Origin: Squalus acanthias
Taxonomy: Eukaryota
DNA length: 64,000 nt
Direction: 5' to 3'
Assembly: GCA_030390025.1 (NCBI GenBank)
Contig: CM059453.1
Coordinates: 6,138,001 to 6,202,000, forward strand
Each line of letters starts with the position of its first letter. Position 1 is the first letter of the stretch. A program made the position numbers and the translations under genes. The notes beneath the pieces are model-generated. The model was not told the origin of the DNA and did not search any database. It saw nothing but the letters and a program-made list of their open reading frames with translations. Below are positions 14,801-30,915 of this stretch, piece after piece.

Positions 14801-17746
14801 GATCGGGTCTCTCGTCCTCAAACGGTTCGAACACGGTCCCTTACGCAGGGGAGCCGAATTTCCGGCCTCTGCCGGGTGTCAGATTGCCGTTTATTAAGCC
14901 CGACCAAAAACCCGAAAAATGGGCAAAAATGGCGAAAACAAATTCCACCCGAAAAGGCTTAAATGTCGGACGGACGGCAGTGCGGGTCGGTCTCTGCAGT
15001 CCATTTGTCCCTTTGGACATTTGCATAACTATTTTCCCATTGACTTTTGGTTATCCATTTGTCACTTTCCGATACCGTGCCCGCTTACCGACGGCCCGGC
15101 AGGCAGCGCAGGATTCCGACACTTTCCCGAACTCGCCCGGAGCCAGCGCAGCAATATAGTGTGCGCCGGGGCGTTCCAACGAGCTGTGCCTGACCGAAAT
15201 CGGACACAGCAGTCTGGAACCGGAGGCGTTTGACTGCGGCATTGATCACCTTTCTGCAGGTACCCCGCCAACCCCTGAGTACAGAAATGACAAGTGTCAA
15301 ATCAGCGGGTCGAACGACCAACTCCGTCCGACCAGGAGCACCAAATCGCCGCAAATGGCCAGTTTTCATTTGTCCATCGCGGCTTCCGATTGAATTCATG
15401 ATTTCCAACTCAGTAACCAGTGTTCTGAAAACTTGCCAGAAAATGCATATGACCATTTCCCGGGAGCAATTCGCTTCGCCAAGCGGGAAATCATTACCGG
15501 AAGCCCCGGTGAGGCGCCCAAATCCGATCCCTTCGGACCTCTGGTAGAACTTTGAACGGCCATATCTCCGGACTCCGGCGTCGGAGCAAAGCCGGTTTGC
15601 CACCGTTAGACGCGGCTTCCCGTGCCCAGTCGAACGCCGCCCGGCACGGCGGTCAGGGAAAAATAAAAATTTTTTGGCCGATTTCTGAAAAAAAAATTCC
15701 GGCCTGAAATCGGGTCTCTCGGCCTCAAACGTTTCCAATACGGTCCGTTACGCAGGGGAGCCGAATCCACGGCCTCTGCCGGGTGTCAGATTGCCATTTT
15801 TTAAGCCCGACAAAAAACAGAAAAATGGGCAAAAATGCGAAAAAATGTCCGCCTAAAAAGAGTATAGAATGTCGTCCCTTTGACATTTGGTTCACCATGT
15901 GTCACTTTTCAAAATCAGTTAATGAGTTCCCACTTGTGATACATTGGTTAACTATTTGACCCATTGACTTTAGATTAACCATTTGTAATTTTCCGACTTA
16001 GTCTCTGTGTGCCACTTTTGCAAGAATTTTCGTTCGTATGGACGACTTTGTTCAAAGATTTCACGGCTTTGGAGATGGCCGTTTCCCACTCGGCTCGTGT
16101 GTTTTTTGCGGCATTTTACACCTTTTCCAGCGGCGGTGCTCACCCTCCCCAGTTTCGGCGACTAGCGACACGCTCCCCGGTGGGCCACCGCTCTGGTTCT
16201 GGAACCCCCGATGCCCCTTGCCCTCGGCTTCCGCAAATGGCGCCCCCCAGCAGATCGGTAGCCGGCCCACCGATTTAGCAGTCGGAAAGCGGTCTGCAGG
16301 CTGACTTCCGTCACCCGGCCGGGCAAAGGCGCAGCTACACTGGGTCGATACTGCTCCCTTCCGCCCCCCAAGCCCATTCAGGCGCCGTTGACCGGATGAG
16401 GATCCGGCTTTCCAGCCCGAAGTTATACTCGATACCCGGCCCGCTGACCGACGGCCCGGCAGGCGGCACGGGATGCCGACACTTTCCCGATCTCGCCCGG
16501 AGCCAGGGCAGTAATATAGTGTGCGCTAGCACCCGTGCTTTCCAACGAGCCATGTCGGACCGAAATTGGACAAGCCAGTCCGGAACGTTAGGCGTTTGAC
16601 TGTGCCCCGCCGACCGGGGCAAACGGTGATTGTATACGAAAACTGCAACGGCAGGATTCCAACTCCAGAGGGCAGCACTCATTCCCGTCGTTTTAAACCG
16701 GAAAACCCCGGCTCGCTTTTGGAGCGGTCGGCACCCGGTTTCCCGGTGTCGCACCGACAACGTTCCACTACCGATGGATGCCCCTTGCCTCTGGCCTGCC
16801 TAGGCTGCTCGGCCACCAAGGTCGGTCGCCGGCCCGTCGACTCAGCTGTCGGAAAGCGGTCTGCAGCCTGACTGCCGTCACTCGGCCGGGCAAAGGCGCA
16901 GCTACACCAGGCTGCTGCTGGCCTTTGCAGCCCCGCAAGCCCATTCAGGCGCCCTTTACCCGGTCCGGATCCAACATTCCCGCCCGAGGTTATTCTCGAT
17001 ACCCGGCCAGCTGACCGACGGCCCTGCAGGCGGCACGGGATTGCGACACTTTCCCCAACTCGCCCGGGGCCACCGCAGCAATATAGTGTGGGTCGGCGCC
17101 GTGGCGTTCCAACCAGCCATCCCCGACCAAAATCGGACAGGGGAGTCGGCAACGTAAGGAGTTTGACTGCCGCCCAGCCAAACCGGGGCAAATGTATAAC
17201 TGAAAACTAAAAGTCTTGCACCGCCAGAGGGCAGCACTCAATCTCGTCGTTTTAAACGGGACAATTCCAGGAAAGCTTCGGAGCGGTTGGTACCCGGCTT
17301 CCCGGTGTCGCACCGACACCGTTCCTGTACCGCTGGATGCTCCTTGCGCCCGGCCTGCCCAGGCCGCTCGGCCACCCAGGTCGGTGGCCGGCCCGCTGAC
17401 TCAGCTGTCGGAAAGCGGTCTGCAGCCTGACTGCCGTCGCTCGGCCGGGCAAAGAGCCAGCTACACCAGGCTGGTGCTAGACTGTGCAGCCCCGGAAGCC
17501 CATTTATGCGCCCTTGACCCGGATTGGATCCGGCATTCCTGCCCGAAGTAAGACCACATAACCGGCCCGCTGACCGACGGCCCGGCAGGCGGCACGGCAT
17601 TCCCATACGTTCCCCAACTAGCCCGGAGCCAGTGCAGAAATATGGTGTGCGCCATCGCCCGCGCTTTCCAACCAGCCGACCCCGACCCAAATCGGACATG
17701 GGGTTCGGGAAGAAAACCCATTTGACTGCGGCCCTGCAAACCGGGG
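11860..17746. repeat. GC-rich subrepeat array (~410-570 bp units); probable rDNA intergenic spacer
   Basis: The core GTCGGAAAGCG..CTGCAG.CTGACT.CCGTC recurs near 12150, 12560, 13440, 14005, 16280, 16850 and 17410. The cassette from 8820 recurs at ~13055, 14497 and 15407. Contiguous with the 28S 3' end. Confidence 0.8.
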
Positions 17747-18288
17747 TGTTGGGGAGAAAATAAGATTCTCAGAGTCTGTGTAAAGTCCAAAAACACATAG
17801 TTTATTGACAAAGTACTTTGGGAGCAGGAGCCAAAAGGTCCCGTGACCTTTGTAACATCCTTCTCGTTTAACCTTTCTTCAGTACAGCTTATATTCAATA
17901 TTTCTGGCGACATGCCATCATACATCGATTTTTGTCCAATTATATGGTATTACATTAATCACCTGATTATATTTTGCCTTTATCTATATTTATTTGTCAA
18001 CAATCATAAAAGCAGTTACATCTTGTTATGCCTTTTTGAGCATGGTCTAATCCCACAGTTTACTACTGTATGTTATCTGTGATTGGCACCGTGCCTACGG
18101 TCTCTAGCTAACTTTGTAAAAGGCCTCTTTCAATACCGTTTATTAAACACCGAACCCTCCCTCAAAAATCTGTCTAGCAGCTGTAATTATATCTATTCCT
18201 CATCTCGTTTTGCAAAACCTTCACTGCACATGGTTTTATTGCAAATTGTGTAGAAATTGAATTTGACCATTTCAAATTAACTCTTTCA
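17747..18288 (-). mobile_element. Solo LTR (542 bp) with 5-bp TSD CGGGG
   Basis: Minus-strand ends TGAAAGAG...CTCCCCAACA, with TATAAG then AATAAA near the 3' end. CGGGG lies at 17742-17746 and 18289-18293, interrupting the spacer motif CCGGGGCAAA. Confidence 0.85.
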
Positions 18289-18379
18289 CGGGGCAAATGG
18301 TTAATTGGACATGCTTCAACCACGCTTTCTACTCATTTCGGGCGCTTTAAACAAGCCGACCACGCTCACTTCCGAGCAG

Positions 18380-18910
18380 CGGCAAAGAGTACAGCTTTCC
18401 ACCGCTCATTCGGCCGACCAAGCGCGCTTCCGAGGTGCAGACGCTAACTACAAATACTCCAGCCCAGCTTTCCACCGCTCAGACAGTCATTCGGACGACC
18501 AAGCGCGCTTCCGAGGAGCAAACGCTTAACTGCCAATACTCCAGCCCAGCTTTCCACTGCTAACACTAAACCTGGCCCATCAAGCTCGCTGCCGAAAACG
18601 GACACCCGTTTCCCCCTTCGCCCTCGCAGGAAACGCTGAACTGCAAATACTCCAGCCCAGCTTTCCACCGCTGACACTAAATCTGGCCGATCAAGCACTG
18701 CAAATACTCCATCCCAGCTTTGCACCGCTGATACTAAACATGGCCGATTAAGCTCGATTCCGAAAACGGACACCCGGCTTCCCTCTTCGCCCTCGCAGCA
18801 AACACTTACCTGCAAATACTCCAGCCCAGCTTTGCACCGCTGACGCTAAACCTGGCCGATTAAGCTCGCTTCCCAAAACCGACACCCTGCTTCCCCCTTC
18901 GCCCTCAAAA
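18380..18910. repeat. Spacer subrepeats (CTGCAAATACTCCAGCCCAGCTTTCCACCGCTGACACTAAACCTGGCC)
   Basis: Five or more imperfect direct copies. Confidence 0.85.
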
Positions 18911-18949
18911 TCACCCTCCGTCAGCCACATCGACAAAAACAAAAAAAAC

Positions 18950-19445
18950 AAGACCGAAATAACACCCTCCATCCCGGCTACGCCCGGCTATGCAACCCCT
19001 TAGCGCGTATTAAGCCTGACAACACTAATTGGAACCAACCGCAGCCGCAAGTTAAAGTGGCAACTAATAAACCAACTTGTTTTTTGTCAGCAACTCATAA
19101 ACCAACGTCTTTCTCTGTAACTCATAAACCAACTTCTTTGTCAGCAACTCATTAACCAACTTCTTTACTAGCAAATCAATAACCAACTTTTTTGTCAGCA
19201 ACTCAGTAACCAATTTCGGTGAAGGCAACTCAGAAACAACACCGACATAACTCCCTCCATCCCGGCTACGCTCGGCTATGCACCACCTTAGCGCGTATTA
19301 AGCCCGACAACACTAATTGTAACCAACCGCAGCCGCAAGTTGAAGTGGCAACTAATAAACCAAGTTGTTTTTTTGCCAGCAACTCATAAACCAACTTCTT
19401 TCTAAGCAAATCATTAACCAATTTCATGTTTGGCAATTCAGTGGT
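18950..19445. repeat. ~290-bp duplicated unit with clustered GCAACTCA(T/G)(A/T)AACC boxes downstream of 28S
   Basis: CCCTCCATCCCGGCTACG...AGCGCGTATTAAGCC at ~18964 and ~19253. Confidence 0.8.
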
Positions 19446-19950
19446 TAATGATTTATCTGATGCTACACTTCACCGCACGTATTTAATAGGTAGCACCTGC
19501 CTGCCCAGCGCGAGTGAGTGAGTCCCGGCTGCAGTCTGTGAGCTGCACTATGTGAGTGTGACAAATGATTTACCGGAGGTCCTGCCAGTGGCGGAGGGAG
19601 AGAAATCATTAACCAAAAGTACTTTTGGTAGGAAAGGAGAGGGAGAGAGAGGAAGAATACCTAAAGTCGAAAACCTGGCCAAGGTGACGCGACCCAAGTA
19701 CCACCCTGGCCTTAGTCGAATAAAGCGGACCATGCGAAGTCCTCGAACTGCAACTGGCCAGGAAGCAGAAGAGGCTTTCGCAAGGAACGTGCTTGTCTCC
19801 GAAGAAGGACACGGTGTGTTCCCGTCGAGAGGAGGTGGCAGAGACTTCGGGCAAGGAGCTCCACGGTCCACCTCCACTCTCTCCCCCCACGGCGAGCATC
19901 CTCCCGGCGAGGAGCGTCCCGGTGGAGAGGAAAGTGTTGCACACGGTAGC

Positions 19951-20401
19951 GACAAACGTTTGGCTCGAGGGCTGACTTTCAATAGATCGCACCGAGATAG
20001 CTGCTCTGCTACGTACGAAACCCTGAGACAGAATCAGGTCGTCTACGAATAATTTAACAACAGGTCCCCCACGAACATGCTATGCGTAAACAGGAGAGAG
20101 GCGGCACCCATCCGTCCGCACTCCAGCCCCGAAACGAGCGGCACTACACACCGATCGGAGTCGGCTATCCCAGGCCAACTAGTGATCCGCGGCGCTACGG
20201 TATNNNNNNNNNNNNNNNNNNNNNNNNNNNNNNNNNNNNNNNNNNNNNNNNNNNNNNNNNNNNNNNNNNNNNNNNNNNNNNNNNNNNNNNNNNNNNNNNN
20301 NNNNNNNNNNNNNNNNNNNNNNNNNNNNNNNNNNNNNNNNNNNNNNNNNNNNNNNNNATCATCAGTAGGGTAAAAATAACCTGTCTCACGACGGTCTAAA
20401 C
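19951..20401 (-). rRNA. 28S rRNA 3'-terminal segment (degenerate, displaced copy)
   Basis: The minus strand reads ...GCGATCTATTGAAAGTCAGCCCTCGAGCCAAACGTTTGTC (28S 3' end) and GTTTAGACCGTCGTGAGACAGG (peptidyl-transferase region). The 154-nt N-run matches the expected intervening length. Confidence 0.95.
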
Positions 20402-21593
20402 GGACAAGTCCTAGCGAATCATCACAGCCAAGGAAGGTGGCGAATTCTATGCGCTAAGCAGACCAGGTAAATTTTGCGAATACGGGCGGCCAAGGACAGG
20501 TCTACCAAGCGTGGAAGTCACCATAAGAGGTTCCAGTGAAACTGAGTTATGTCGTGAATTTTAACAGTTAATCACCCGATCATCATTTGATGTGACTAGC
20601 TTCATTATAATAGACACTCATAATTATAATACATTCAATACATCAATGGTTAACAGGCAAAATAACCAGTAACAACAATAACAACAATTTACAAGCACAC
20701 CCCCGTGTGGAATCCGACCTGGTTCCATACCCACATTTGGGGCTCTGGTAGTTATATCTCGGACAGTCATTGGATAGTGCAGGGCTCTTCCACCGTTTCA
20801 AGAGTTGCTTCTCCTGTGTCCTTTAAGACATCATCATCTGTTGGTGAATCTTCTCAAGGCCCCTGGTCCCTTGGAATAGCGGTGTCTTCCTATCCAGGTA
20901 ACCCGAATTGATAAACCTCGGCTGGTAGCGTACAAATCGTCAATGCTCTCGCCTATTCTTGGGTCTTGATTGGCAGAGTCTTTTTCTTGTCAGCCTCTTA
21001 GGAGCGAGTCTGACAAAGGCTCTTAACTGAGGCCTCGTCTCAGTTTGAAACCCCGCGGGGTATCAAAAGTTCGTTTTCTTTGTTCAGTCCGCTCCTACGG
21101 GAAGGAAAGTTCGCCGCCGATCATTTGAGTTACTAAGGTGTCGGTTTGGCAACACCGATGTGTCGCCGGCAGGACAACGTAATGGTACGACCCGCCATGG
21201 CTCACCACTCAAAAGAAGCCACAGCTACTTGTAACACCGGCTCCCCAGCATTGAGACGGAAGACTTACACACCTGAGCTGCTCAAGGCCCTGCGGTAACT
21301 CTCAAGCGGTTGAGGAGGTTTGCATACTATTTGTGGAGTTACTCGGCCAGTCGTTTTGCCACCGAAGTGTGGCCCAGCGGGACCACGTGGAGGTACGACT
21401 CACTGTGATATAGAACTCCGAAGATTGTCACAGCTACGTTGTAACCCTAAACTCAACTCATGGGAGCCTAAGAGAGTCCTCAACTCAATAGAACCCCAAG
21501 CGGACACTCACCTCAATAGATCCTTGAGGGAGGCCTACGCCTGGAAGAACCGTGAGAGAGTCCCCAACCTAAGCCGCTCGAGGTAGCAGTTGC
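20402..21593 (-). mobile_element. Non-autonomous, internally deleted R2-type non-LTR retroelement (SIDE-like) inside 28S
   Basis: Non-rRNA sequence between 28S segments, in the same orientation as 28S, with its 5' end next to the masked segment containing the R2 target. It has an HDV-like ribozyme core, decayed RTFDTPRGF and YATSRGLSI finger-like motifs, a RTQEKQLLKR Myb-like motif, an AT-rich 3'UTR-like region, and no RT. Confidence 0.8.
21349..21401 (-). ncRNA. HDV-like self-cleaving ribozyme core (R2 type)
   Basis: AGTCGT(P2)-ACC(P3)-TCCACGT(L3)-GGT(P3')-CCCGCT(P1')-GG(J1/4)-G-CCAC-ACTTCG-GTGG(P4)-CAAA(J4/2, catalytic C)-ACGACT(P2'). P1' can pair with the 28S GGCGGG upstream of the R2 site (masked here). 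Confidence 0.85.
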
Positions 21594-22995
<1,402 letters not shown>

Positions 22996-23275
22996 TGGGT
23001 CCAGCCTACATGTGACTCCCGAACCACAGCAATGTGATTGACTCTTAGCTGCCCTCTGAAATGGCCTAACAAGCCAATTAATTATGGGAAGTTAGGCATG
23101 GGCAATAAATACTGGCCTTGCAAGCGACCCCCACATCCCGTGACTGAATAAAATATATATATATTGCAACTGTTGAAGAAGGCGGCCCACCACCACCTTC
23201 TCAAGGGAAACTAGGGATGGGCAATAATTGCCGGCTTTGCCAGCCATGCCCACAGCAGAGAGCTATTTAAAAAAT
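22996..23275 (+). mobile_element. SINE 3' half plus a duplicated LINE-derived tail
   Basis: CCTACATGTGACTCC..CTGCCCTCTGAAATGGCCTA followed by two GGGCAATAA..GCTTTGC/CCTTGC..CCCACA tails shared with 7178-7270. Confidence 0.75.
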
Positions 23276-23814
23276 GTCCCTGCGTTTTCCCAAGTCCAAT
23301 TTTCCAATTATGCCCCCCTTCTGAACATCTTGTTTCTTGTTGAAATGTGATTCTCGCCGGTAGCTCTCAAATGATGAGATCTTAGCTTGCAAGCATCAAA
23401 GCGAGTGTCGGCGGGATTTTAGACAGGAGCGGGTGCCCTGACTGACCTTGAAGTGCCTAACCCAGTTTAGCTAGACGGCGAACAGACTAATTGCTTAATT
23501 GGTTCTTGGTTTTACAGAATTTTGGACAATCTATAATCTTAATTAAATTGCAGTTTATTGTAACTTGTCTGATTCATCCTGCAGCCCGGGGTTTTGCTTG
23601 TTCCATGTTACGTGAGAATGAAGGATTTTCAATCCAACAGCGCCACACAGTGCCAGCTCGACAGCATTGCACAGGCGATCGGTCAGTGTGTCAGACACAT
23701 TTGAGTCCAACAGAGGCAGACATCCCGTATCTTGCGTAGATATAGTCTCAGTTAACCTCACCTACCCCAACATAGACGTCTATAATGTGTACAGGTGTTT
23801 TGAACGAAACAGAT

Positions 23815-24968
23815 GTGCCGCATGGCAGACTGGTCAGGAGAATAAAAGCACATGGGATCCAAGGCAAAGTGGCAAATTGGATCCAAAATTGTCTCAGAGG
23901 CAGGAAACAAAGGGTAATGGTCGAAGGGTGTTTGTGTGACTGGGAGGCTGTTTCCAGTGGGGTTCCGCTGGGCTCAGTACTGGGTCCTTTGCTTTTTGAG
24001 GTATATAGCAATGATTTGGGCTTGAATGTAGGATGTATGATTAAGAAGTTTGCAGATGATACAAAAATTGGGCGTGTGGTTGATAATGAAGAAGAAAGCT
24101 GTAAACTGCAGCAAGATGTCAATGGACTGTTGAGGTGGGCAGAACAGTGGCAAATGAAATTAAATCCGGAGAAGTTTGAGGTAATGCATTTGAAGAGGGC
24201 TAGCAAGGCAAGGGAATAAACAATAAATGGCAGGACACTGAGCAGTGCAGAGGATCAGAGGGACGTTGGAGTGCATGTCCACAGATCCCTGAAGGTAGCA
24301 GGACAGGTAGATAAGGTGATTAAGAATGCATACGGGATACTTGCCTTTATTAGCCGAGGCATAGAATAAAGAGCAAGGAGGTTAAGCTTGAACTGTATAA
24401 AGCACTAGTTAGTCCGCAGCTAGAATACTGCTTGCAGTTCTGGTCACCCCATTACAGGAAGGATGTGATTGCACTAGAGGGGGTGCAGAGGAGATTTACG
24501 AGGATGTTGCGTGGGCTGGGGAATTTTAGCTATGAGGAAAGATTGGATAGGCTGGGGTTGTTTTCTTTGGAACAGTGTAGACTGCGGGGTGACCTAATTG
24601 AGGTGTATAAAATTATGAGGGGCCTAGATAGATTAGATAGGAACGTCCTATTTCCCTTAGCAGAAGGCTCAATAACCAGGGGCCATAGATTTAAGGTAAT
24701 TGGTAGGAGGTTTAGCAGAGATTTGAGGAGCATGCTTTTCACCCAGAGTGTGGTGGGGGTCTGGAACTCACTGCCTTAAAGAGTGGTAGAGGCAGAAACT
24801 CTCATCACATTTAAAAAGTATTTGGATGTGCACTTGAAGTGCCGTAACCTGCAAGGCTACTGATCAATTGCTGGAATGTGGGATTAGGCTGGATAGCTCA
24901 TTGTCGGCCGGCACCGATAAGATGGGCCGAATGGCCTCTTTCTGTGCTGTAAATTTCTATGTTTCTAA
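23815..24968 (+). mobile_element. CR1 LINE, 5'-truncated RT region + 3'UTR
   Basis: GVPLGSVLGPLLF, KFADDTK, QFWSPHYRKD; tail GGGCCGAATGGCCTC..TTTCTATG. Confidence 0.95.
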
Positions 24969-25047
24969 GAATGTGTTCTACTTGCTGCACTTGCTACCTT
25001 TGTCCATTAGATGGCGTGTGTTGTGATATGGTCGCTTTCCACACAAT

Positions 25048-25777
25048 GGCCCTGAAATTCTGGTCGAAGGCTTCACGCGGACGCAACCCCCCACCTGCAC
25101 TTAAGAAGCGCGCCTACCATTATGCTCTGGGCCCGCGCAGAATTCCGTTCCTGTGCCTGCTCCAGCTGCCGGTGCGCAGGGAACGCGTATCCCAGGGGCG
25201 AAGCTAGTTCGCAGCTTCCCTGGGATCACGTGGGCCATGGGGAGCTATTCGGAGCAGGGAACCTCCATTCATAGATTTGACAGGAAGATCTGTCAAATCT
25301 ATTGATAGAGATGGGCCCCAAAACCGAAATAAAATTTCAAATACATTTTTTTTTATCACATTTTTAAACTAACTATAAATTACATAAATTAACTACTTTA
25401 AACAAAAAACATTAATTATTTAAAAATATAATTAATGTTTTTAACGGTGCTAAAAATAAACTTACCTTTCTTTAAAGTACTTTAAAATGATAAATCTGTG
25501 GAAAAAATGTTTTACTTTTACTTTCTTCACCTCTTACCTTGTTGAAAGCAGGCCTTGCTCCTGCTTTTTCTACACGCAGCTGGTAGGGACTTAGCCACAC
25601 TGCATCAACAGAGAAAAACACGGAAGTTCGATGCGTACGCGCTGCCTCTCCGGCGCACGCGGTTCACCTCCGAACCCCTTCCTTCAAGAGAACGGAAGTT
25701 CCGGTTTCCAGCGCATGCGCACTTCCGTTGGCCCTACACAGCGCGTACTCACACGGAGGGAACGGAATTTCAGGTCC
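25048..25777. mobile_element. MITE (Harbinger-like), family B
   Basis: TIRs GGCCCTGAAATT...AATTTCAGGTCC. Related to 32954-33718 and 39338-40077. Confidence 0.8.
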
Positions 25778-25823
25778 ATCCTCTCAATAAAAGACACAAC
25801 GCCAAAGGCCATTTGAACCACTT

Positions 25824-26960
25824 TGTACACAAAGAACAGGAATCTTCGGCTTTTTAAGGGGAATCACAACCGGAAAACCTATTAATGCTTGTAAAGTTCC
25901 TCTTGGAATTTCTGTTCCTATTAGCAACACAGTCTGGGTGTATTGGGTTGAATTATAAAAAAGGGTGGAGATTTACCAAGGTGATTCTTTGCTACTTTTC
26001 ATGCAAATTACCTGGCTGTGGCTTGGAACATAGCGCCATTTTATGGAAATCAACGTGCTTTTTAAATTTCATAAGGACATTGGAGGCAATGTGAGGCAAG
26101 TAATTTATTTCATATTTTGTACTGAGTTTCAGTAACCAATCGTTAGCAGCCTCTGTAAGAACAAGCCATTAGCTGCAAGAACTTGCTATAACTTGAGCAA
26201 ACTTAAAAAGCTGACCAAATGTTATATCCCAGCATACTTCGGGAGGCTGAGAGGTCAGTTCCTGTAGGAACATTGTATGAAAGCTGTTAATCAGATAAGG
26301 ATGCAACAGACGGTTGGGCGTTACAAAGACAGGAACACCTTCTGGCATCTGGTGTGAAGGGCCTTGGGGGCCCACTGATAAGAGGAAAACAGCCGCCGAC
26401 CATTTGTCACACAGTTTGGGACACAGACGCATAGAGGAGCCTGCCCAAGTTTTTAGGGTATAAGATATGCTGTTTTAAGACACTCGGGGTTACTGCAGTT
26501 GGGGGCAAGCGACCTGGTCAGTTGCCCATTAAAGACGTACGTCTAGCCATCTCCGAACTGACCACTCGCTGGTGTTAGTACGTGTGTAGTGTTAGCTTAT
26601 TATCGTTTGAGCATAAACTAAGGGAATAAACCTGTGCATGCTTAAATATAATCGTGAGTATTATATGCAACAGTTTTGTGTGAGCTTACTTGTAACCCCT
26701 TGCTCAATTTAAGAAAGTTATTTTTCCTTGATTTTAAAGTAAGCGAATAAACCTGTGTATGTTGAGATATAATCAGGTGTATTATATGCAGCAGTTTTGT
26801 GTGAGCTTATTTGTTACCTCTTGCCGATTTTATTTAAAAAAAAGAAAGTAATTGTCGAATACTTGTGTTTTGTGTTGTCTGTTCCACGGGTCTGAACTTT
26901 GTAAACTGTCGGACGGTTAAGGGACAAAAGTGAATTTAAACGTCATCATTGGGCTGAACT
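25824..26960 (+). mobile_element. LTR-like repeat with an internal ~120-bp duplication
   Basis: TATAAG, two AATAAACCTGTG..TATTATATGCA.CAGTTTTGTGTGAGCTTA copies (~26625, ~26746). Termini and TSD not resolved. Confidence 0.35.
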
Positions 26961-26965
26961 GTATT

Positions 26966-27190
26966 CATAGAATCCTAGAATAATACAGCACAGAAGGGGA
27001 CATTCGGCCATATTGCCTGTGCCGGCACTTTGAAAGTGCTATCCGATTAGTCCCACTCGCCTGCTCTAACCCCATAGCCCTGCAAATTATACCTTTTAAT
27101 ATATGTATCAAATATCCTTTGTAAAATTACTATTGTCTCTGTTTCCACTATCCTTTCAGGCAATGCATTCCAGAATATAACTATTCTCCG
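26966..27190 (-). mobile_element. CR1 3' tail fragment
   Basis: CATAGAATCCTAGAA..ACAGCACAGAAGG..ATTCGGCC is the reverse-complement CR1 tail. Confidence 0.75.
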
Positions 27191-27947
27191 TCCATTCACT
27201 GCAACATTTTCCCAAATTTACTTTCCAGCACTTTTTAGTGTTCTGACAGTGGCTTTCTGTACATTTCCCCATACCATCACCCCACATATGTGATCAGCAG
27301 TTACAGTCGCTTAGGTCATGCAGTGTGAAACTCCCTTGCCATCCTCCTCGCCTCTCTACTTCTCTATCTTCCGTCAAAACATTCTAACGGTCCTAGCATT
27401 CTATCTACTCTATCAAAACCCCTTAAACATTCTTCAATGTCTTTGCGTTCTGCAACACAGTAAAGACAGTGGCTCAAATGAACGGACAGATGATAATCAA
27501 AAGTGAACTGATTTCGCATACTGAAAAGGAGGCAGAAATAACCAGTGACCCATTATTATAACACATTATAATCTTAGTTCATCCTTTTAGCTTCTCTTGA
27601 ATTGACATAGAGAATGAAACAAATCAGATCACAGGAAGATTCCTCTGCTGCCCTTGTTTTATTGACAGTTAAACATATTGGGAGGATTTATTTCTATTAA
27701 AAGCATAACATGCCTTATACTCATGTTTCCTGCAGTTGTTCAAGTCTCACTTTAAATTAGAAACTGATTTTCAGGCGCAGCAACCAATACAGTCATTTTC
27801 TGGTGCTTTGTTGCAAAATTTCTTTGCAAACTAGTCCCCAGTTGTGAGGGTTCATATTGTGGGCCAATGCATTTCAACAGATTGACAGACAAAACGATGT
27901 TAGAAGTGGTTTGTAAAATAGTTATTTGCACAGAATAGGGAAAAAAA

Positions 27948-28815
27948 TGAATCATAGAGTCAGAGAATGGTTGCAGAACGGAAGGAGGCCATTCGGTCGT
28001 CGAGTCCGTGCCGGCTCTCTGCAAGAGCACTTGAGCTAGTCCCACTCCCCAGCCCTTTCCCCGTAGATATGCAATCTTTTTTCTTTCAGGTGCTTATCCC
28101 TTTTGAAAGCCACGATTGAGTCTTCCTCTGCCATTCTTTCAGGCAGTGCATTCCAGATCATAACATTTCGCTGCCTCAAGAAGTGTTTCCTCATGTTGCC
28201 TTTGGTTCTTCTGCCAATCACCTTAAATCTGTGTCCTCTGGTTCTCGACTGTTCCACCAATGGGAAAAGTTTCTCTCTATCCACCCTGTCTAGACCAATT
28301 ATGATTTGAACACCTCTATCAAATCTCCTCTCAATCCTCTCTGCTCTAAGGAGAACAATCCCAGCTCCTCTAGTCTATCCACGTGACTGACGTCCCTCAT
28401 CCCTGGAACCATTCTTGGAAATCTTTTCTGCACCATCTCTAAGGCCTTCACATCCTTCCTAAAGTGTGCTGCCCAGAATTGGACACAATACTCTAGTTGT
28501 GGCCGAACCATTGTTTTATAAATGGTTCATCATAACTTCTTTGTTTTTGTACTCTATGCCTCTATTTATGAATCCCAGGACACCGTTTGCCTTTTTAACC
28601 GCTTTCTCAAACTGCCATGCCAACTTCAACGACTTGTGCACATATACCCCCCAGTTCTCTCCATGACCCCCTTTTAGAATTGTACCCTTTGGCTTGTATT
28701 GCCTCTCCTCGTTCTTCTTTTCAAAATCTGTCAATTCACACTTTTCTGCGGTAAATTTAATCTGCTGCGTGTCCGCCCATTCCACCAGACTATGTATGTC
28801 CTCTTGAAGTCTATG
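27948..28815 (-). mobile_element. CR1 LINE 3' fragment
   Basis: VRPQLEYCVQFWAAHFRKDV, KANGVLGFINRGIEYK. Absent from the paralogous site near 40740. Confidence 0.92.
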
Positions 28816-28987
28816 GTTAATGTTGAAAAGCAAAATTGACCAAAAAGTCACATTCCCTACTCTATTTGAACTAACTCGAGCTGTGAATTTAAATAAAAAA
28901 ATGTCACTTATTTTCTGAACGAAATCCATTCTCATTGTCCTTTTTGCAATGCAATGGTGTCTGTTTTACTTCATAACATCAGGTGTG

Positions 28988-29200
28988 TTAATGTGTTGTC
29001 AGTTTCAAGACCATCCGCCCTGGCAGTATAAATCCTGTTATCTTTATTGTTGCATATTCGCAGATCTCCTCATCTTGGATATAACACTCATGAAAGCGGA
29101 TGTTTGAGACAGTGATAGTCGAGAACAAAATCTCCTCATTCTGAGCTGCTTCAGTCAATTGTGCGGCGCCCCGACCAGCCTCTGGAAACTGATCGTCCCT
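28988..29200 (-). pseudogene. Orphan Siglec-like terminal exon (RDDQFPEAG...EEILFSTI...EICEYATIK...)
   Basis: ttgcag/ acceptor; paralog of 40952-41125; ITIM Tyr replaced by Phe; native stop lost. Confidence 0.8.
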
Positions 29201-29479
29201 CTGCAACGGATGACATTTGCTTTAGATATGGAGCTATTGCAGATATGGAGCTGAACGCGATGAGAGTATGCTGTCTGCACCAGAACAAATCTCACAATTT
29301 TTACCTCGTTAGTGTTCTATTGGCACTGGTCCATGAGATGAGCGCTGTGAAGTTTTGATGCAATAAACACAGATCGTCCAATTATATATTCGGACGAGTT
29401 CATAGAACTGGGGTGTGGGACTAAATTTGATACATCATTCACAGGTACGGTGGGCCGACTGGCCTCCTTGTGTGCTGTA

Positions 29480-30915
29480 CAATTCGATGAAGCCAAGGCT
29501 GTTAAATGGCATACTGGATCCTGGGCTTTATATATTGAGGTATAGGGTACGATAGCAAGGGAATTACGCTTAACCTTTCTAAATCAGTGGTTCGGCATCG
29601 GCTGGAGTATTGGGCCGAAATTTGCGGTTGGGGGCGTCTCTCCGGAGTACGCCTCCCACCGAGAAAAATACGAAACTTTCTGGTGTCTCCGGAACGGCGA
29701 AGTCTTGCTTTCCTGGGCCTCCAGGCGTACGGCTGCGTCATGACCCACGTGATCCCAGGGACACAGTCGATTCGGAACAGTCCCTAGGATCATGCGGGCC
29801 AGTTCAACCAATTAGAAAGGGGGATTCCTCGTCAGCTTATGGGGATTCCATTTACGAAGGGAATCCCCATAACCTTATGAGAAATCCCCAAATAAATAAT
29901 AATTAACACAATTCTAATAAAAATAAATATTTCCATGTTCAAAATCAATTCAAAATCAAATTGATTAAGCATTTAAAATAAAAAATATTTTTTTGGAAAG
30001 TAATAAAAACTATTTTAGTCTAGCCGAAATTTACATGAATTAATTTTAAATGTTTTTCTATATTTGAATCATGTTTAAACTTTTAACTTATCATTCATTT
30101 TAGCACTTACACTGGTAAAAATAGGCCCTTCGCCTACTTGGACCTGGCGTAAGGGTTTCATGGGCATTCGTTCGGCAGCGGTTAGGCAAATAGTCCAACT
30201 CTGTACCAACGAAAGTGTTTTTGGGGTGGATACGCACGATTTGTCAGGAGAACCTTGACAGAATGCAAGCACCGGGTTTTCGCGCATGCGCACCTGCGGA
30301 TACCTTGAAATTGCGTGGTCTTTTTGAGGGGTTGTGGCGGCGTTCGCTGTGCATTCACCGTCATTGGCTCCGCAAAATCCGGGCCATTATTACGTGCAAT
30401 TCTGTGTGCAATACTGTCGGAAGGATGTCAAGGCTATACAGAGGACACAGAGGAAATTTACTAGAATTATAGGAGGGCGGTGGACCTGCATTTAAGTGTA
30501 GAATCTAGAGAATCTGGGATTGTTCTCCTGAAACCACGAAGTTTTACGGGAGATCAGATAGAGGTGTTCAAAATTAAGCAGAATTTTGATAGAGTAAATA
30601 AGGATTCACTGTTTCCATTGGCAGGAGCGTCGCTAATCAGAGGACACCGTTTTAAGACAATTGGAAAGGAACCAAATGAGAAATGAAATGTTTTTTAAGC
30701 AGCGAGTTGGCAGTGTGATGCACTGCCTGAAAGGGTGTTGGAAGCATATTCAATAGTAACTTTCCAAAGGAAATTGAATACAGGCATGAACATGAAAAAT
30801 AAAAATTAGGGCTAAGCAAAAATCAGGGGAATTGGAAAACTTGGTTAGCTCCTTCAAAGGGCCAGCACAGGCACCGTGGGCGGAATGGCCTCCTCCTGTA
30901 CTGAATGATTCTAAG
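29480..30915 (+). mobile_element. Old CR1 fragment interrupted by a MITE
   Basis: CR1 RT-region text on both sides of 29612-30385. The uninterrupted paralog is at 44110-44745. Confidence 0.8.
29612..30385. mobile_element. MITE (Harbinger-like) with ATT target duplication
   Basis: TIRs GGGCCGAAATTTGCGG...CCGCAAAATCCGGGCC, ATT on both sides, empty site at ~44212. Confidence 0.85.

What the first reader, a model, noticed from the sequence alone, without database searches (positions are those of the whole stretch)
20402..21593. Candidate non-autonomous R2 'SIDE' in a cartilaginous-fish 28S gene: intact ribozyme, dead protein
Seen: 1192 nt of non-rRNA sequence inside 28S, co-oriented with it. It carries a complete HDV-like fold near its 5' end, then one frame with many stops that still shows KRTFDTPRGF and LYATSRGLSI (C2H2 finger-like FxTxRGL). 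RTQEKQLLKR (Myb-like WTxEExxLL, ~20795-20822) follows in another frame, then an AT-rich UTR-like tail; there is no RT or endonuclease. Known: R2 elements insert at AAGG/TAGC in 28S, are co-transcribed with rRNA and freed by an HDV-like ribozyme; short internally deleted R2 derivatives (SIDEs) are described in Drosophila. Inference: the ORF is far more decayed than the flanking 28S while the ribozyme pairings are intact, which suggests a lineage kept by selection on RNA elements and mobilised in trans. I am not aware of such an element described in chondrichthyans.
Basis: partly seen in the sequence, partly recalled or inferred. Interest (0 to 1): 0.9.

Follow-up and report, generated by a model that had tools for sequence, protein, structure and literature searches.

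The report
Dead R2 fragment in stray 28S
A stray, decayed copy of the large ribosomal RNA gene carries the front 1.2 kb of an R2 jumping gene with a recognisable self-cutting RNA core, but nothing shows that it is a member of a separately mobile short family.

Summary
The 1.19 kb of non-rRNA DNA is real and lies on the same (minus) strand as a 28S gene. An HDV-like ribozyme core sits at 21400-21348, 193 nt from the insert's 5' edge. It has P2, P3, L3, P1.1, P4 and a J4/2 cytosine (Rfam drz-agam-1, 15.3 bits, below gathering; strict descriptor 1 of 5000 shuffles). Its P1 3' strand fits the published "-28" R2 type. The 28S partner strand would lie in an N run, so the fold is not shown to be complete.

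A second, degenerate copy of the ribozyme unit lies 208 nt downstream. The zinc-finger and Myb "remnants" exist as strings, but Pfam, phmmer and stop density give them no support.

The host 28S is a decayed, 5'-truncated orphon. At least about 640 model positions of 28S are missing at a non-R2 3' junction. One deletion explains both the missing element body and the missing 28S.

The SIDE reading is not supported and not excluded. Other first-stage notes of this scan report full-length R2 copies elsewhere in this genome. R2 is already published for cartilaginous fish.

The parts
20403..21593 (-). Non-rRNA insert (element sense = minus strand).
   Evidence: No rRNA match inside at E<=10. No other copy in the window.
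21348..21400 (-). HDV-like ribozyme core, unit A. P2 21400-21395 pairs with 21353-21348. P3 21394-21392 pairs with 21384-21382. L3 is 21391-21385. The P1 3' strand CCCGCU is 21381-21376. P1.1 GG is 21375-21374. P4 21372-21369 pairs with 21362-21359. The putative catalytic C is at 21358.
   Evidence: Rfam drz-agam-1, 15.3 bits, E 5.9 over 4227 families, model 16-79 of 82. Strict descriptor hit, 1 of 5000 shuffles. Loose descriptor, 179 of 1000 shuffles.
21401..21593 (-). Long J1/2-like 5' region. It holds a 14-nt direct repeat (21568-21555 and 21484-21471, each containing GACTCTCT) and a visible 5-bp candidate P1 strand AGCGG (21578-21574).
   Evidence: Repeat D1. The fold is a long imperfect hairpin, z -1.23, not significant. 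A given 5-mer is expected by chance about once per kb, so the internal P1 is a candidate only.
21336..21445 (-). Unit A of an internal duplication (hairpin, ribozyme core and a short tail ending in AGTAACTC).
   Evidence: Local alignment to unit B scores 46 against 14.5 +/- 2.1 for shuffles, 0 of 500 reaching it. Sliding-window self-comparison.
21127..21235 (-). Unit B, a degenerate paralogue of unit A 208 nt downstream. P3 is ACC/UGU (one pair broken). L3 is AUUACGU and lacks the CC needed for P1.1. P2 is reduced to 4 pairs. P4 and the upstream hairpin are kept with changed letters.
   Evidence: alignment. Letters read. Fold (z -1.97, 6 of 200 shuffles fold as well).
20701..21100 (-). There is no open frame and no family match.
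   Evidence: phmmer.
20403..20700 (-). AT-rich 3' part (GC 0.40) that ends at a non-canonical junction with 28S. It has no A-rich terminal tract and no unusual fold stability.
   Evidence: (z -0.74).
21742..23026 (-). Upstream 28S of the orphon (interrupted by an N run). It is 5'-truncated at about Rfam LSU model position 956-972 and joined to non-rDNA repeat sequence.
19960..20203 (-). Visible 3' end of the same 28S, followed by spacer sequence.
   Evidence: I recognised it by eye as a 28S 3' end (recollection); Rfam reported no match for it.

Best explanation
This is the 5' portion of an R2 non-LTR retrotransposon, left as a dead relic in a stray, decaying piece of rDNA (an orphon).

Shown:
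- The host 28S lacks its first roughly 950-970 model positions, and no 18S or 5.8S lies nearby.
- The host 28S deviates from the eukaryote consensus at roughly 8% of highly conserved positions.
- The insert is co-oriented with it.
- The insert carries an HDV-like ribozyme core whose P1 3' strand is of the published '-28' R2 type. A degenerate second copy of the same unit follows.
- About 0.8 kb with no detectable coding signal comes after that.
- At least about 640 model positions of 28S are missing downstream of the insert.

Inferred:
- An R2 inserted at the R2 site of a 28S gene.
- One deletion or rearrangement then removed the rest of the element (reverse transcriptase, endonuclease, 3' UTR) together with the adjoining 28S.
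- The rDNA segment came to lie outside the array, before or after that deletion.
- In a co-transcript with intact 28S, unit A would fold with the 28S leader and cut 28 nt upstream of the insertion site. Here there is no rRNA promoter context and no 3' module, so the copy is most likely inert.
For: Ribozyme core: drz-agam-1, 15.3 bits; per-family E is about 5.9/4227; strict descriptor, 1 of 5000 shuffles on either strand; the observed hit is on the sense strand only.

P1 3' strand: CCCGCU is the wobble complement of the start of the 28S leader strings printed for arthropod R2 junctions. The '-28' type is described as the most common R2 type. Long structured J1/2 regions are known for R2 ribozymes.

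Orphon and decay. By eye I counted about 23 mismatches at about 290 upper-case consensus positions, and many non-standard pairs are flagged.

Missing 28S: model position 2120 is at window 21796 and model position 2961 is at the 3' junction. Only 202 letters, 148 of them masked, lie between the first point and the insert.

Parsimony: one deletion accounts for both the absent element body and the absent 28S.

No coding signal.

No near-identical multi-copy family visible: 0 of 20 listed runs hold half of the words, and the best hold 0.26. No second copy in the window.

Unchecked notes of this scan report full-length R2 copies with a 28-nt 28S leader elsewhere in this genome.
Against: - The 5' junction and the 28S strand of P1 are hidden in an N run, so placement at the R2 site and a complete fold are not shown.
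- Rfam's score is far below gathering (15.3 against 37).
- My strict descriptor was written after I had seen the hit.
- No full-length R2 of this or any shark could be fetched. Colinearity with the first 1.2 kb of R2, which is what this reading predicts, is untested.
- Runs of five other coded organisms share 5-9% of exact 31-letter words with the insert. That means some part of it is well conserved between species. This fits a constrained RNA module and could also fit a family.
- CpG observed/expected is about 1.0 in the 28S flanks and the ribozyme units. This sits oddly with long decay under methylation.
Confidence: 0.6

Rival explanations
1. It is a copy of a true non-autonomous R2 derivative (a SIDE): ribozyme module plus 3' module, mobilised in trans by the resident R2. 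This copy was later damaged at its 3' junction, or was integrated aberrantly, in the orphon.
For: Short length with a ribozyme and no RT or endonuclease. The middle part has no coding signal, like the unrelated 197-bp centre of R2Dwi_SIDE. Exact words are shared with runs of several organisms. The ribozyme core is intact although the host 28S is decayed.
Against: The 3' junction is not the R2 site and 28S is missing, so a second event is needed. The 3' end shows no A-rich terminal tract and no unusual fold stability, features described for the R2Tg and R2Bm 3' modules. 0 of 20 runs hold half of the words. The published SIDE had about 70 reads under 3% divergent. No second copy in the window, and none noted by the scan so far (a blank there means little). 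An intact core is expected by chance in roughly 6-12% of cases at about 8% decay (my estimate).
Confidence: 0.15
2. It is the product of one aberrant retrotransposition. Reverse transcription was primed at a nick about 0.65-0.7 kb downstream of the R2 site. The 5' end was then attached through annealing of the 28S leader carried by the RNA, which deleted the 28S in between.
For: For '-28' type R2s the 28S leader on the cDNA is postulated to anneal upstream and prime second-strand synthesis (abstract). That would give a normal 5' junction together with a displaced 3' junction.
Against: It requires the insert's 3' end to be a genuine R2 3' end. That end is not recognisable and the body is missing, so an internal deletion is needed as well. 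The 5' junction cannot be seen.
Confidence: 0.08
3. It is a hybrid, like the Drosophila R2/R1 SIDEs: an R2 5' ribozyme module joined by recombination to the 3' part of another element inserted further downstream in the same 28S gene.
For: R2/R1 hybrid SIDEs exist (abstract). The 3' junction lies at a distinct, highly conserved 28S position. The 3' part differs in composition from the 5' part.
Against: No similarity of the 3' part to anything was found. No target-site duplication can be examined.
Confidence: 0.07
4. It is not R2-derived. It is filler or unrelated repeat DNA captured during repair of a broken rDNA fragment, with a chance HDV-like motif.
For: The Rfam score is below gathering and E is 5.9 over all families. 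A loose descriptor hits 179 of 1000 shuffles. There is no R2 protein signal.
Against: Strict descriptor: 1 of 5000 shuffles. The P1 3' strand matches the published 28S leader type. The motif has the same strand as 28S and a position next to the expected R2 site. A significant paralogous second unit is present. An independent eukaryote-like metagenome contig, L001, carries the same core with a 10-bp P2.
Confidence: 0.07

Closest known systems
R2 HDV-like ribozymes of the '-28' type (earwig, Nasonia giraulti, silkmoth and TriCasA shown; the avian ZoAl R2 predicted). Sources: PMC3774820 (abstract and sections 12, 14, 16 read) and PMC11331408 (passages read).
   Same: Nested core with P2, a 3-bp P3, an L3 of U-CC-N-C-G-U form, P1.1 GG/CC, a variable P4 and a cytosine in J4/2. 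The GC-rich P1 3' strand is complementary to the 28S leader. J1/2 is long.
   Different: The 28S strand of P1 cannot be seen here. J1/2 would be over 190 nt and contains internal repeats. A second degenerate unit follows. No cleavage assay has been done.
[quoted passage not shown]
   Same: A short insert in 28S with an R2-type ribozyme, no ORF and an unrelated middle part.
   Different: Those have canonical junctions, a 3' end 81% identical to the R2 3' UTR, poly(A) tails, about 70 reads under 3% divergent, and shown self-cleavage. None of these is shown here, and the 3' junction test fails.
R2 elements of Chondrichthyes: R2Sqj of Squatina japonica (PMC5035012, one passage seen) and sharks and stingrays in PMC13188248 (passages seen; its tables are supplements that I could not open).
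   Same: Same host group and same element family. Both lineage A and lineage D R2s are reported in sharks.
   Different: Those are full-length or RT-bearing elements in rDNA. This is a 1.19-kb fragment in an orphon. I could not compare sequences.
Degenerate R2 copies kept in rDNA, as in the stick insect Bacillus rossius (PMC4370867; search listing and start of abstract only).
   Same: Non-functional R2 copies persisting within rDNA-derived sequence.
   Different: Those are copies replicated by rDNA turnover within the array. Here a single copy lies outside the array.

Membership tests
R2 non-LTR retrotransposon | Inserted at the specific R2 site of 28S, in the orientation of the rRNA | tested here: inconclusive
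   Orientation met. The 5' junction is hidden in an N run. The 3' junction is not at the R2 site: 28S resumes at model position 2961, and at least about 640 positions are missing.
R2 non-LTR retrotransposon | HDV-like self-cleaving ribozyme at the 5' end | tested here: inconclusive
   Core met. The 5' strand of P1 is visible only as a 5-bp candidate. The Rfam score is below gathering. No assay.
R2 non-LTR retrotransposon | Single ORF with N-terminal zinc finger(s) and Myb, reverse transcriptase and a restriction-like endonuclease | tested here: not met
   Longest sense open stretch is 59 codons. Pfam: 0 relevant families for the 10 pieces scanned. phmmer found only a false positive. A fragment of an R2 would fail this feature too.
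R2 non-LTR retrotransposon | 3' UTR module recognised by the R2 protein | not testable with these tools
   No reference R2 of this host could be fetched. No A-rich terminal tract, and fold z -0.74.
[quoted passage not shown] | Both junctions canonical at the R2 site | tested here: not met
   The 3' junction is displaced with loss of 28S. The 5' junction is masked.
[quoted passage not shown] | 5' and 3' ends related to those of the resident autonomous R2 | not testable with these tools
   No resident R2 sequence was available. Handles through spurious ORFs found nothing.
[quoted passage not shown] | Several copies of low divergence with junction variation typical of target-primed reverse transcription | tested here: inconclusive
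No second copy in the 64-kb window.
HDV-like ribozymes | Nested double pseudoknot P1, P1.1, P2, P3, P4 with a catalytic C in J4/2 | tested here: inconclusive
   P2 6 bp, P3 3 bp, P1.1 2 bp, P4 4 bp and C21358 are present. P1 is 5 bp internal, or a 6-bp pairing with masked 28S that could not be read.
HDV-like ribozymes | Rfam gathering score for a curated HDV-like family | tested here: not met
   drz-agam-1 scored 15.3 bits against a gathering score of 37. No hit at gathering in the window.

The most novel reading that the evidence does not exclude
The insert is a copy of a cartilaginous-fish R2-derived non-autonomous family. It would be built from tandem ribozyme modules that carry their own 28S-leader-like P1 strand (AGCGG in a leader-like context at 21578-21550). 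Such a module could be cut out of any transcript, not only from 28S, and could be mobilised in trans by the R2 copies that other notes of this scan place outside rDNA in this genome.
Probability: 0.1. Interest if true: 0.65.

Novelty: new member of a known kind. Interest (0 to 1): 0.3.

Why it matters
As it stands this is an annotation point. It is a dead R2 5' fragment with a recognisable '-28'-type ribozyme core in a shark-like rDNA orphon. R2 in cartilaginous fish is already in print, so the fragment adds one more vertebrate example of that ribozyme type.

Two details are worth a short follow-up. The first is the tandem, diverged duplication of the whole ribozyme unit. The second is the displaced 3' junction with loss of 28S, which bears on how R2 copies are damaged or mis-integrated.

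It would matter more if long reads showed a family of such short elements. That would be the first R2 SIDE outside Drosophila. My searches found none in print. The supplements of PMC13188248 could not be opened and may list relevant elements.

Tried and rejected
Tried without result:
- Rfam at gathering over the window. Rfam at E<=1 over 17000-30000. Rfam at E<=10 over the insert and over its 3' part. The only hits in the 3' part were JPX_1 (E 2) and a fungal snoRNA (E 8.3), which I take as chance.
- tRNA scan, 0 genes.
- Tandem repeats, two short AT-rich arrays only.
- BLAST of the insert against the window, no other copy.
- Pfam on 10 of 20 sense pieces of at least 22 aa. Only chance-level hits appeared: SNARE, P_proprotein and MS_channel, E 0.15-0.26.
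- The search for homologous proteins with two antisense open stretches (90 aa and 81 aa), used as handles to fetch related copies. No hit in either.
- phmmer of the 51-aa piece that holds LYATSRGLSI against 1.84 billion representatives. The one hit, P0001 (E 2.9e-06, 11 stretches), is a 1395-aa repeat protein with the motif SISDLYATKRSTG. It has no R2 domain and I rejected it as a repeat-inflated chance match.
- Motif scan of public collections with the ribozyme core. Metagenomes gave 7 loci, of which only L001 has a ribozyme fold. Viral contigs gave 0. Prokaryote genomes gave 7 chance hits.
- Findings search by sequence, blank.

Considered and rejected or left open:
- A second descriptor hit at the very 5' edge (P2 CAACU from 21592). 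I take it as chance because that loose descriptor hits 179 of 1000 shuffles. The stretch folds as a plain long hairpin.
- The two [FY].[ST].RG[LF] strings in one frame are unusual (0 of 5000 shuffles). The pattern was written after seeing them. They lack all Cys and His, and no profile supports them, so I do not read them as zinc fingers.
- The last 30 nt of the insert reminded me of the reverse complement of a 28S stretch from the missing part. That is recollection only, and Rfam gave no support.
- The alignment of unit A, unit B and L001 was not structure-aware in its 3' half. I did not run pair counts on it.
- The third homologous-protein search was not used. The length filter excludes full-length R2 proteins, and two handles had already found nothing.

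Full report
WHAT IS THERE. The window holds one 28S rRNA gene fragment, on the minus strand. At gathering threshold Rfam reports only LSU model positions 956-1444 at 23026-22544. A permissive scan adds 1507-1846 and 1925-2120. A focused scan aligns 972-1657. No 18S or 5.8S match was reported in the 64 kb. Upstream of about 23026-23040 the sequence is non-rDNA repeat-like DNA. The 28S is therefore a 5'-truncated stray copy (an orphon). This agrees with another first-stage note on this window (s1-890890).

The copy is also decayed. In the alignment I counted, by eye, about 23 mismatches at about 290 upper-case (highly conserved) consensus positions. There is a 2-letter deletion in a universally conserved hairpin, and many pairs are flagged as non-standard. 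CpG observed/expected is nevertheless about 1.0 in the 28S parts, against 0.44 in the neighbouring non-rDNA. I cannot explain that.

THE INSERT. Between an N run and the point where 28S resumes lie 1192 letters with no rRNA match. On the 5' side, the last aligned 28S is model position 2120 at window 21796. Only 54 visible and 148 masked letters lie between there and the insert. At least about 640 model positions of 28S are therefore absent. By my recollection of 28S, not tested, the R2 site would fall inside the N run. The 5' junction cannot be read, and I did not try to recover it. The 3' junction is certainly not the R2 site. Note s1-890814 says the same.

THE RIBOZYME. A permissive Rfam scan of the insert alone gives one ribozyme hit: drz-agam-1, an HDV-like family, at 21400-21349 on the minus strand. 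The score is 15.3 bits against a gathering score of 37, with E 5.9 over 4227 families and model positions 16-79 of 82. Read from the sequence, the parts are as follows.
- P2: AGUCGU (21400-21395) pairs with ACGACU (21353-21348).
- P3: ACC pairs with GGU.
- L3: UCCACGU.
- P1 3' strand: CCCGCU (21381-21376).
- P1.1: GG pairs with the CC of L3.
- P4: CCAC pairs with GUGG.
- J4/2: a cytosine (21358) followed by AAAA.

A loose descriptor of this architecture is not informative; it hits 179 of 1000 dinucleotide shuffles. A strict one requires a 6-bp Watson-Crick P2, an L3 of the form U-CC-...-G-N, and a P4 that abuts the cytosine. It hits only this site, on the sense strand, and 1 of 5000 shuffles on either strand. 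I wrote the strict version after seeing the hit, so that figure is generous.

The architecture and the long J1/2 fit published R2 ribozymes. In those, the P1 stem is 6-7 bp, P2 is at least 5 bp, and P4 is variable. 28S sequence forms the 5' strand of P1, and cleavage is often 28 nt upstream of the insertion site. J1/2 can be long and structured, and the '-28' type with its GC-only P1 is the most common. The strand CCCGCU is the wobble complement of the first six letters of the 28S leader strings printed for arthropod junctions.

The corresponding stretch of this window is masked, so the full fold is inferred and not shown. Inside the visible insert the best partner is 5 bp (AGCGG, 21578-21574). 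A 5-mer match in about 200 nt is not evidence by itself. It does sit in a segment that, by eye, resembles a decayed copy of the leader, with GACTCTCT at the fitting distance. That 8-mer occurs twice, in the repeat.

A SECOND UNIT. The stretch 21445-21336 (a hairpin, the core and a short tail) has a paralogue at 21235-21127. The local alignment score is 46 against 14.5 +/- 2.1 for shuffles, with 0 of 500 reaching it. Unit B keeps the upstream hairpin and P4 with changed letters, including one change on both sides of a pair. Its L3 reads AUUACGU, which has no CC for P1.1. Its P3 has one broken pair and its P2 is down to four pairs. I read it as an inactive duplicate. None of the folds is significantly more stable than shuffles (z -0.74 to -1.97).

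NO PROTEIN SIGNAL. The three peptide strings exist. The sense frames of the 3' 698 nt carry 11, 17 and 11 stops in 232 codons, against 13 expected from composition. Pfam finds nothing relevant in the 10 pieces scanned. phmmer of the 51-aa piece against 1.84 billion representatives returns only a repeat protein unrelated to R2. Two matches to [FY].[ST].RG[LF] in one frame are unusual (0 of 5000 shuffles). The pattern is post hoc and all zinc ligands are absent. With about 8% decay, real fingers would be expected to keep most of their Cys and His.

COPIES ELSEWHERE. No second copy is in the window. The run index lists 20 runs. 17 of them hold some part and none holds half of the words. The best are five runs of one coded organism at 0.23-0.26. 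Runs of five other coded organisms hold 0.05-0.09. The shares fit either partial coverage of a single locus or relatives about 4-9% diverged. I cannot tell which.

Depth, junction reads and the position of the shared words are therefore unknown. Attempts to fetch related copies through spurious ORFs found nothing.

A scan of metagenome contigs with the core motif found one eukaryote-like contig, L001. Its GC is 0.40, it has no Rfam hit, and it has no ORF of 100 aa. It carries the same P3-L3-P1 strand and a 10-bp P2, but no 28S upstream. The other 6 metagenome hits and the 7 prokaryote hits lack P2, apart from one weak 5-bp case.

READING. One deletion with one end inside an R2 and the other in 28S explains the missing RT and endonuclease, the missing 28S and the odd junction together. 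This is my best explanation (0.6). The SIDE reading needs an internal deletion, a family and then a second event at the 3' junction. The features that define a SIDE in print are canonical junctions, a 3' end like the R2 3' UTR, and many copies under 3% divergent. Each of these either fails here or is untestable (0.15). Aberrant priming downstream with leader-guided 5' joining (0.08), a hybrid with another 28S-specific element (0.07) and a non-R2 origin (0.07) remain possible.

The argument that the ribozyme was kept by selection does not hold. With about 8% decay, 25-33 constrained letters stay intact by chance in roughly 6-12% of cases (my estimate). The sister unit B has in fact decayed.

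LITERATURE. R2 in Chondrichthyes is in print: R2Sqj (PMC5035012, one passage) and several sharks and stingrays, some with two lineages (PMC13188248, passages). 'Non-autonomous' does not occur in the main text of the latter. The 7 papers that hold 'short internally deleted' plus 'retrotransposon' do not, by title and start of abstract, describe an R2 SIDE outside Drosophila. Supplements were closed. Table S2 of PMC13188248 may name this species.

VERDICT. This is a new member of a known kind. Interest is low to moderate.

Noticed in passing
window 18800-23040: The 28S is part of an rDNA orphon. It is 5'-truncated at about LSU model position 956-972 and is followed by spacer. No 18S or 5.8S match appears in the 64 kb. 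Non-rDNA repeat sequence abuts it at about 23027.
   Followed up: partly
window 22314-23026: The orphon 28S differs from the consensus at about 8% of highly conserved positions (by-eye count), and many of the changes are transversions. Yet CpG observed/expected is about 1.0, against 0.44 in the flanking non-rDNA. This is an odd combination for an old pseudogene.
   Followed up: partly
L001 5080-5300 (metagenome contig Ga0181612_149744): A eukaryote-like contig (GC 0.40, no ORF of 100 aa, no Rfam hit) carries an R2-type HDV-like core with the same P3, L3 form and P1 3' strand, and a 10-bp P2. It has no 28S upstream. A leader-like AGCGG segment lies about 150 nt upstream.
   Followed up: partly
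   Followed up: no
window 20412-20440: The last 30 nt or so of the insert reminded me of the reverse complement of a conserved 28S stretch from the missing part. That would point to an inversion during the rearrangement. Rfam gave no LSU hit there, so this is recollection only.
   Followed up: partly
window 19000-19450: The spacer downstream of the 28S contains repeated short units of the form GTTGGTT(T/A)ATGAGTTGC and two longer repeated blocks.
   Followed up: no
window 21289-21293 and 21168-21173: Unit B's P1 3' strand (CCUGCC) also has a visible 5-bp upstream partner (GCAGG), about 100 nt upstream of its P2. It would still pair, with one wobble, with the published 28S leader type. This hints that whole leader-plus-ribozyme modules were duplicated.
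   Followed up: no
P0001: A 1395-aa repeat protein (motif SISDLYATKRSTG, weak DUF4152 match) reached E 2.9e-06 against a 51-aa query only through 11 repeated short matches. It is an example of repeat-inflated significance.
   Followed up: yes
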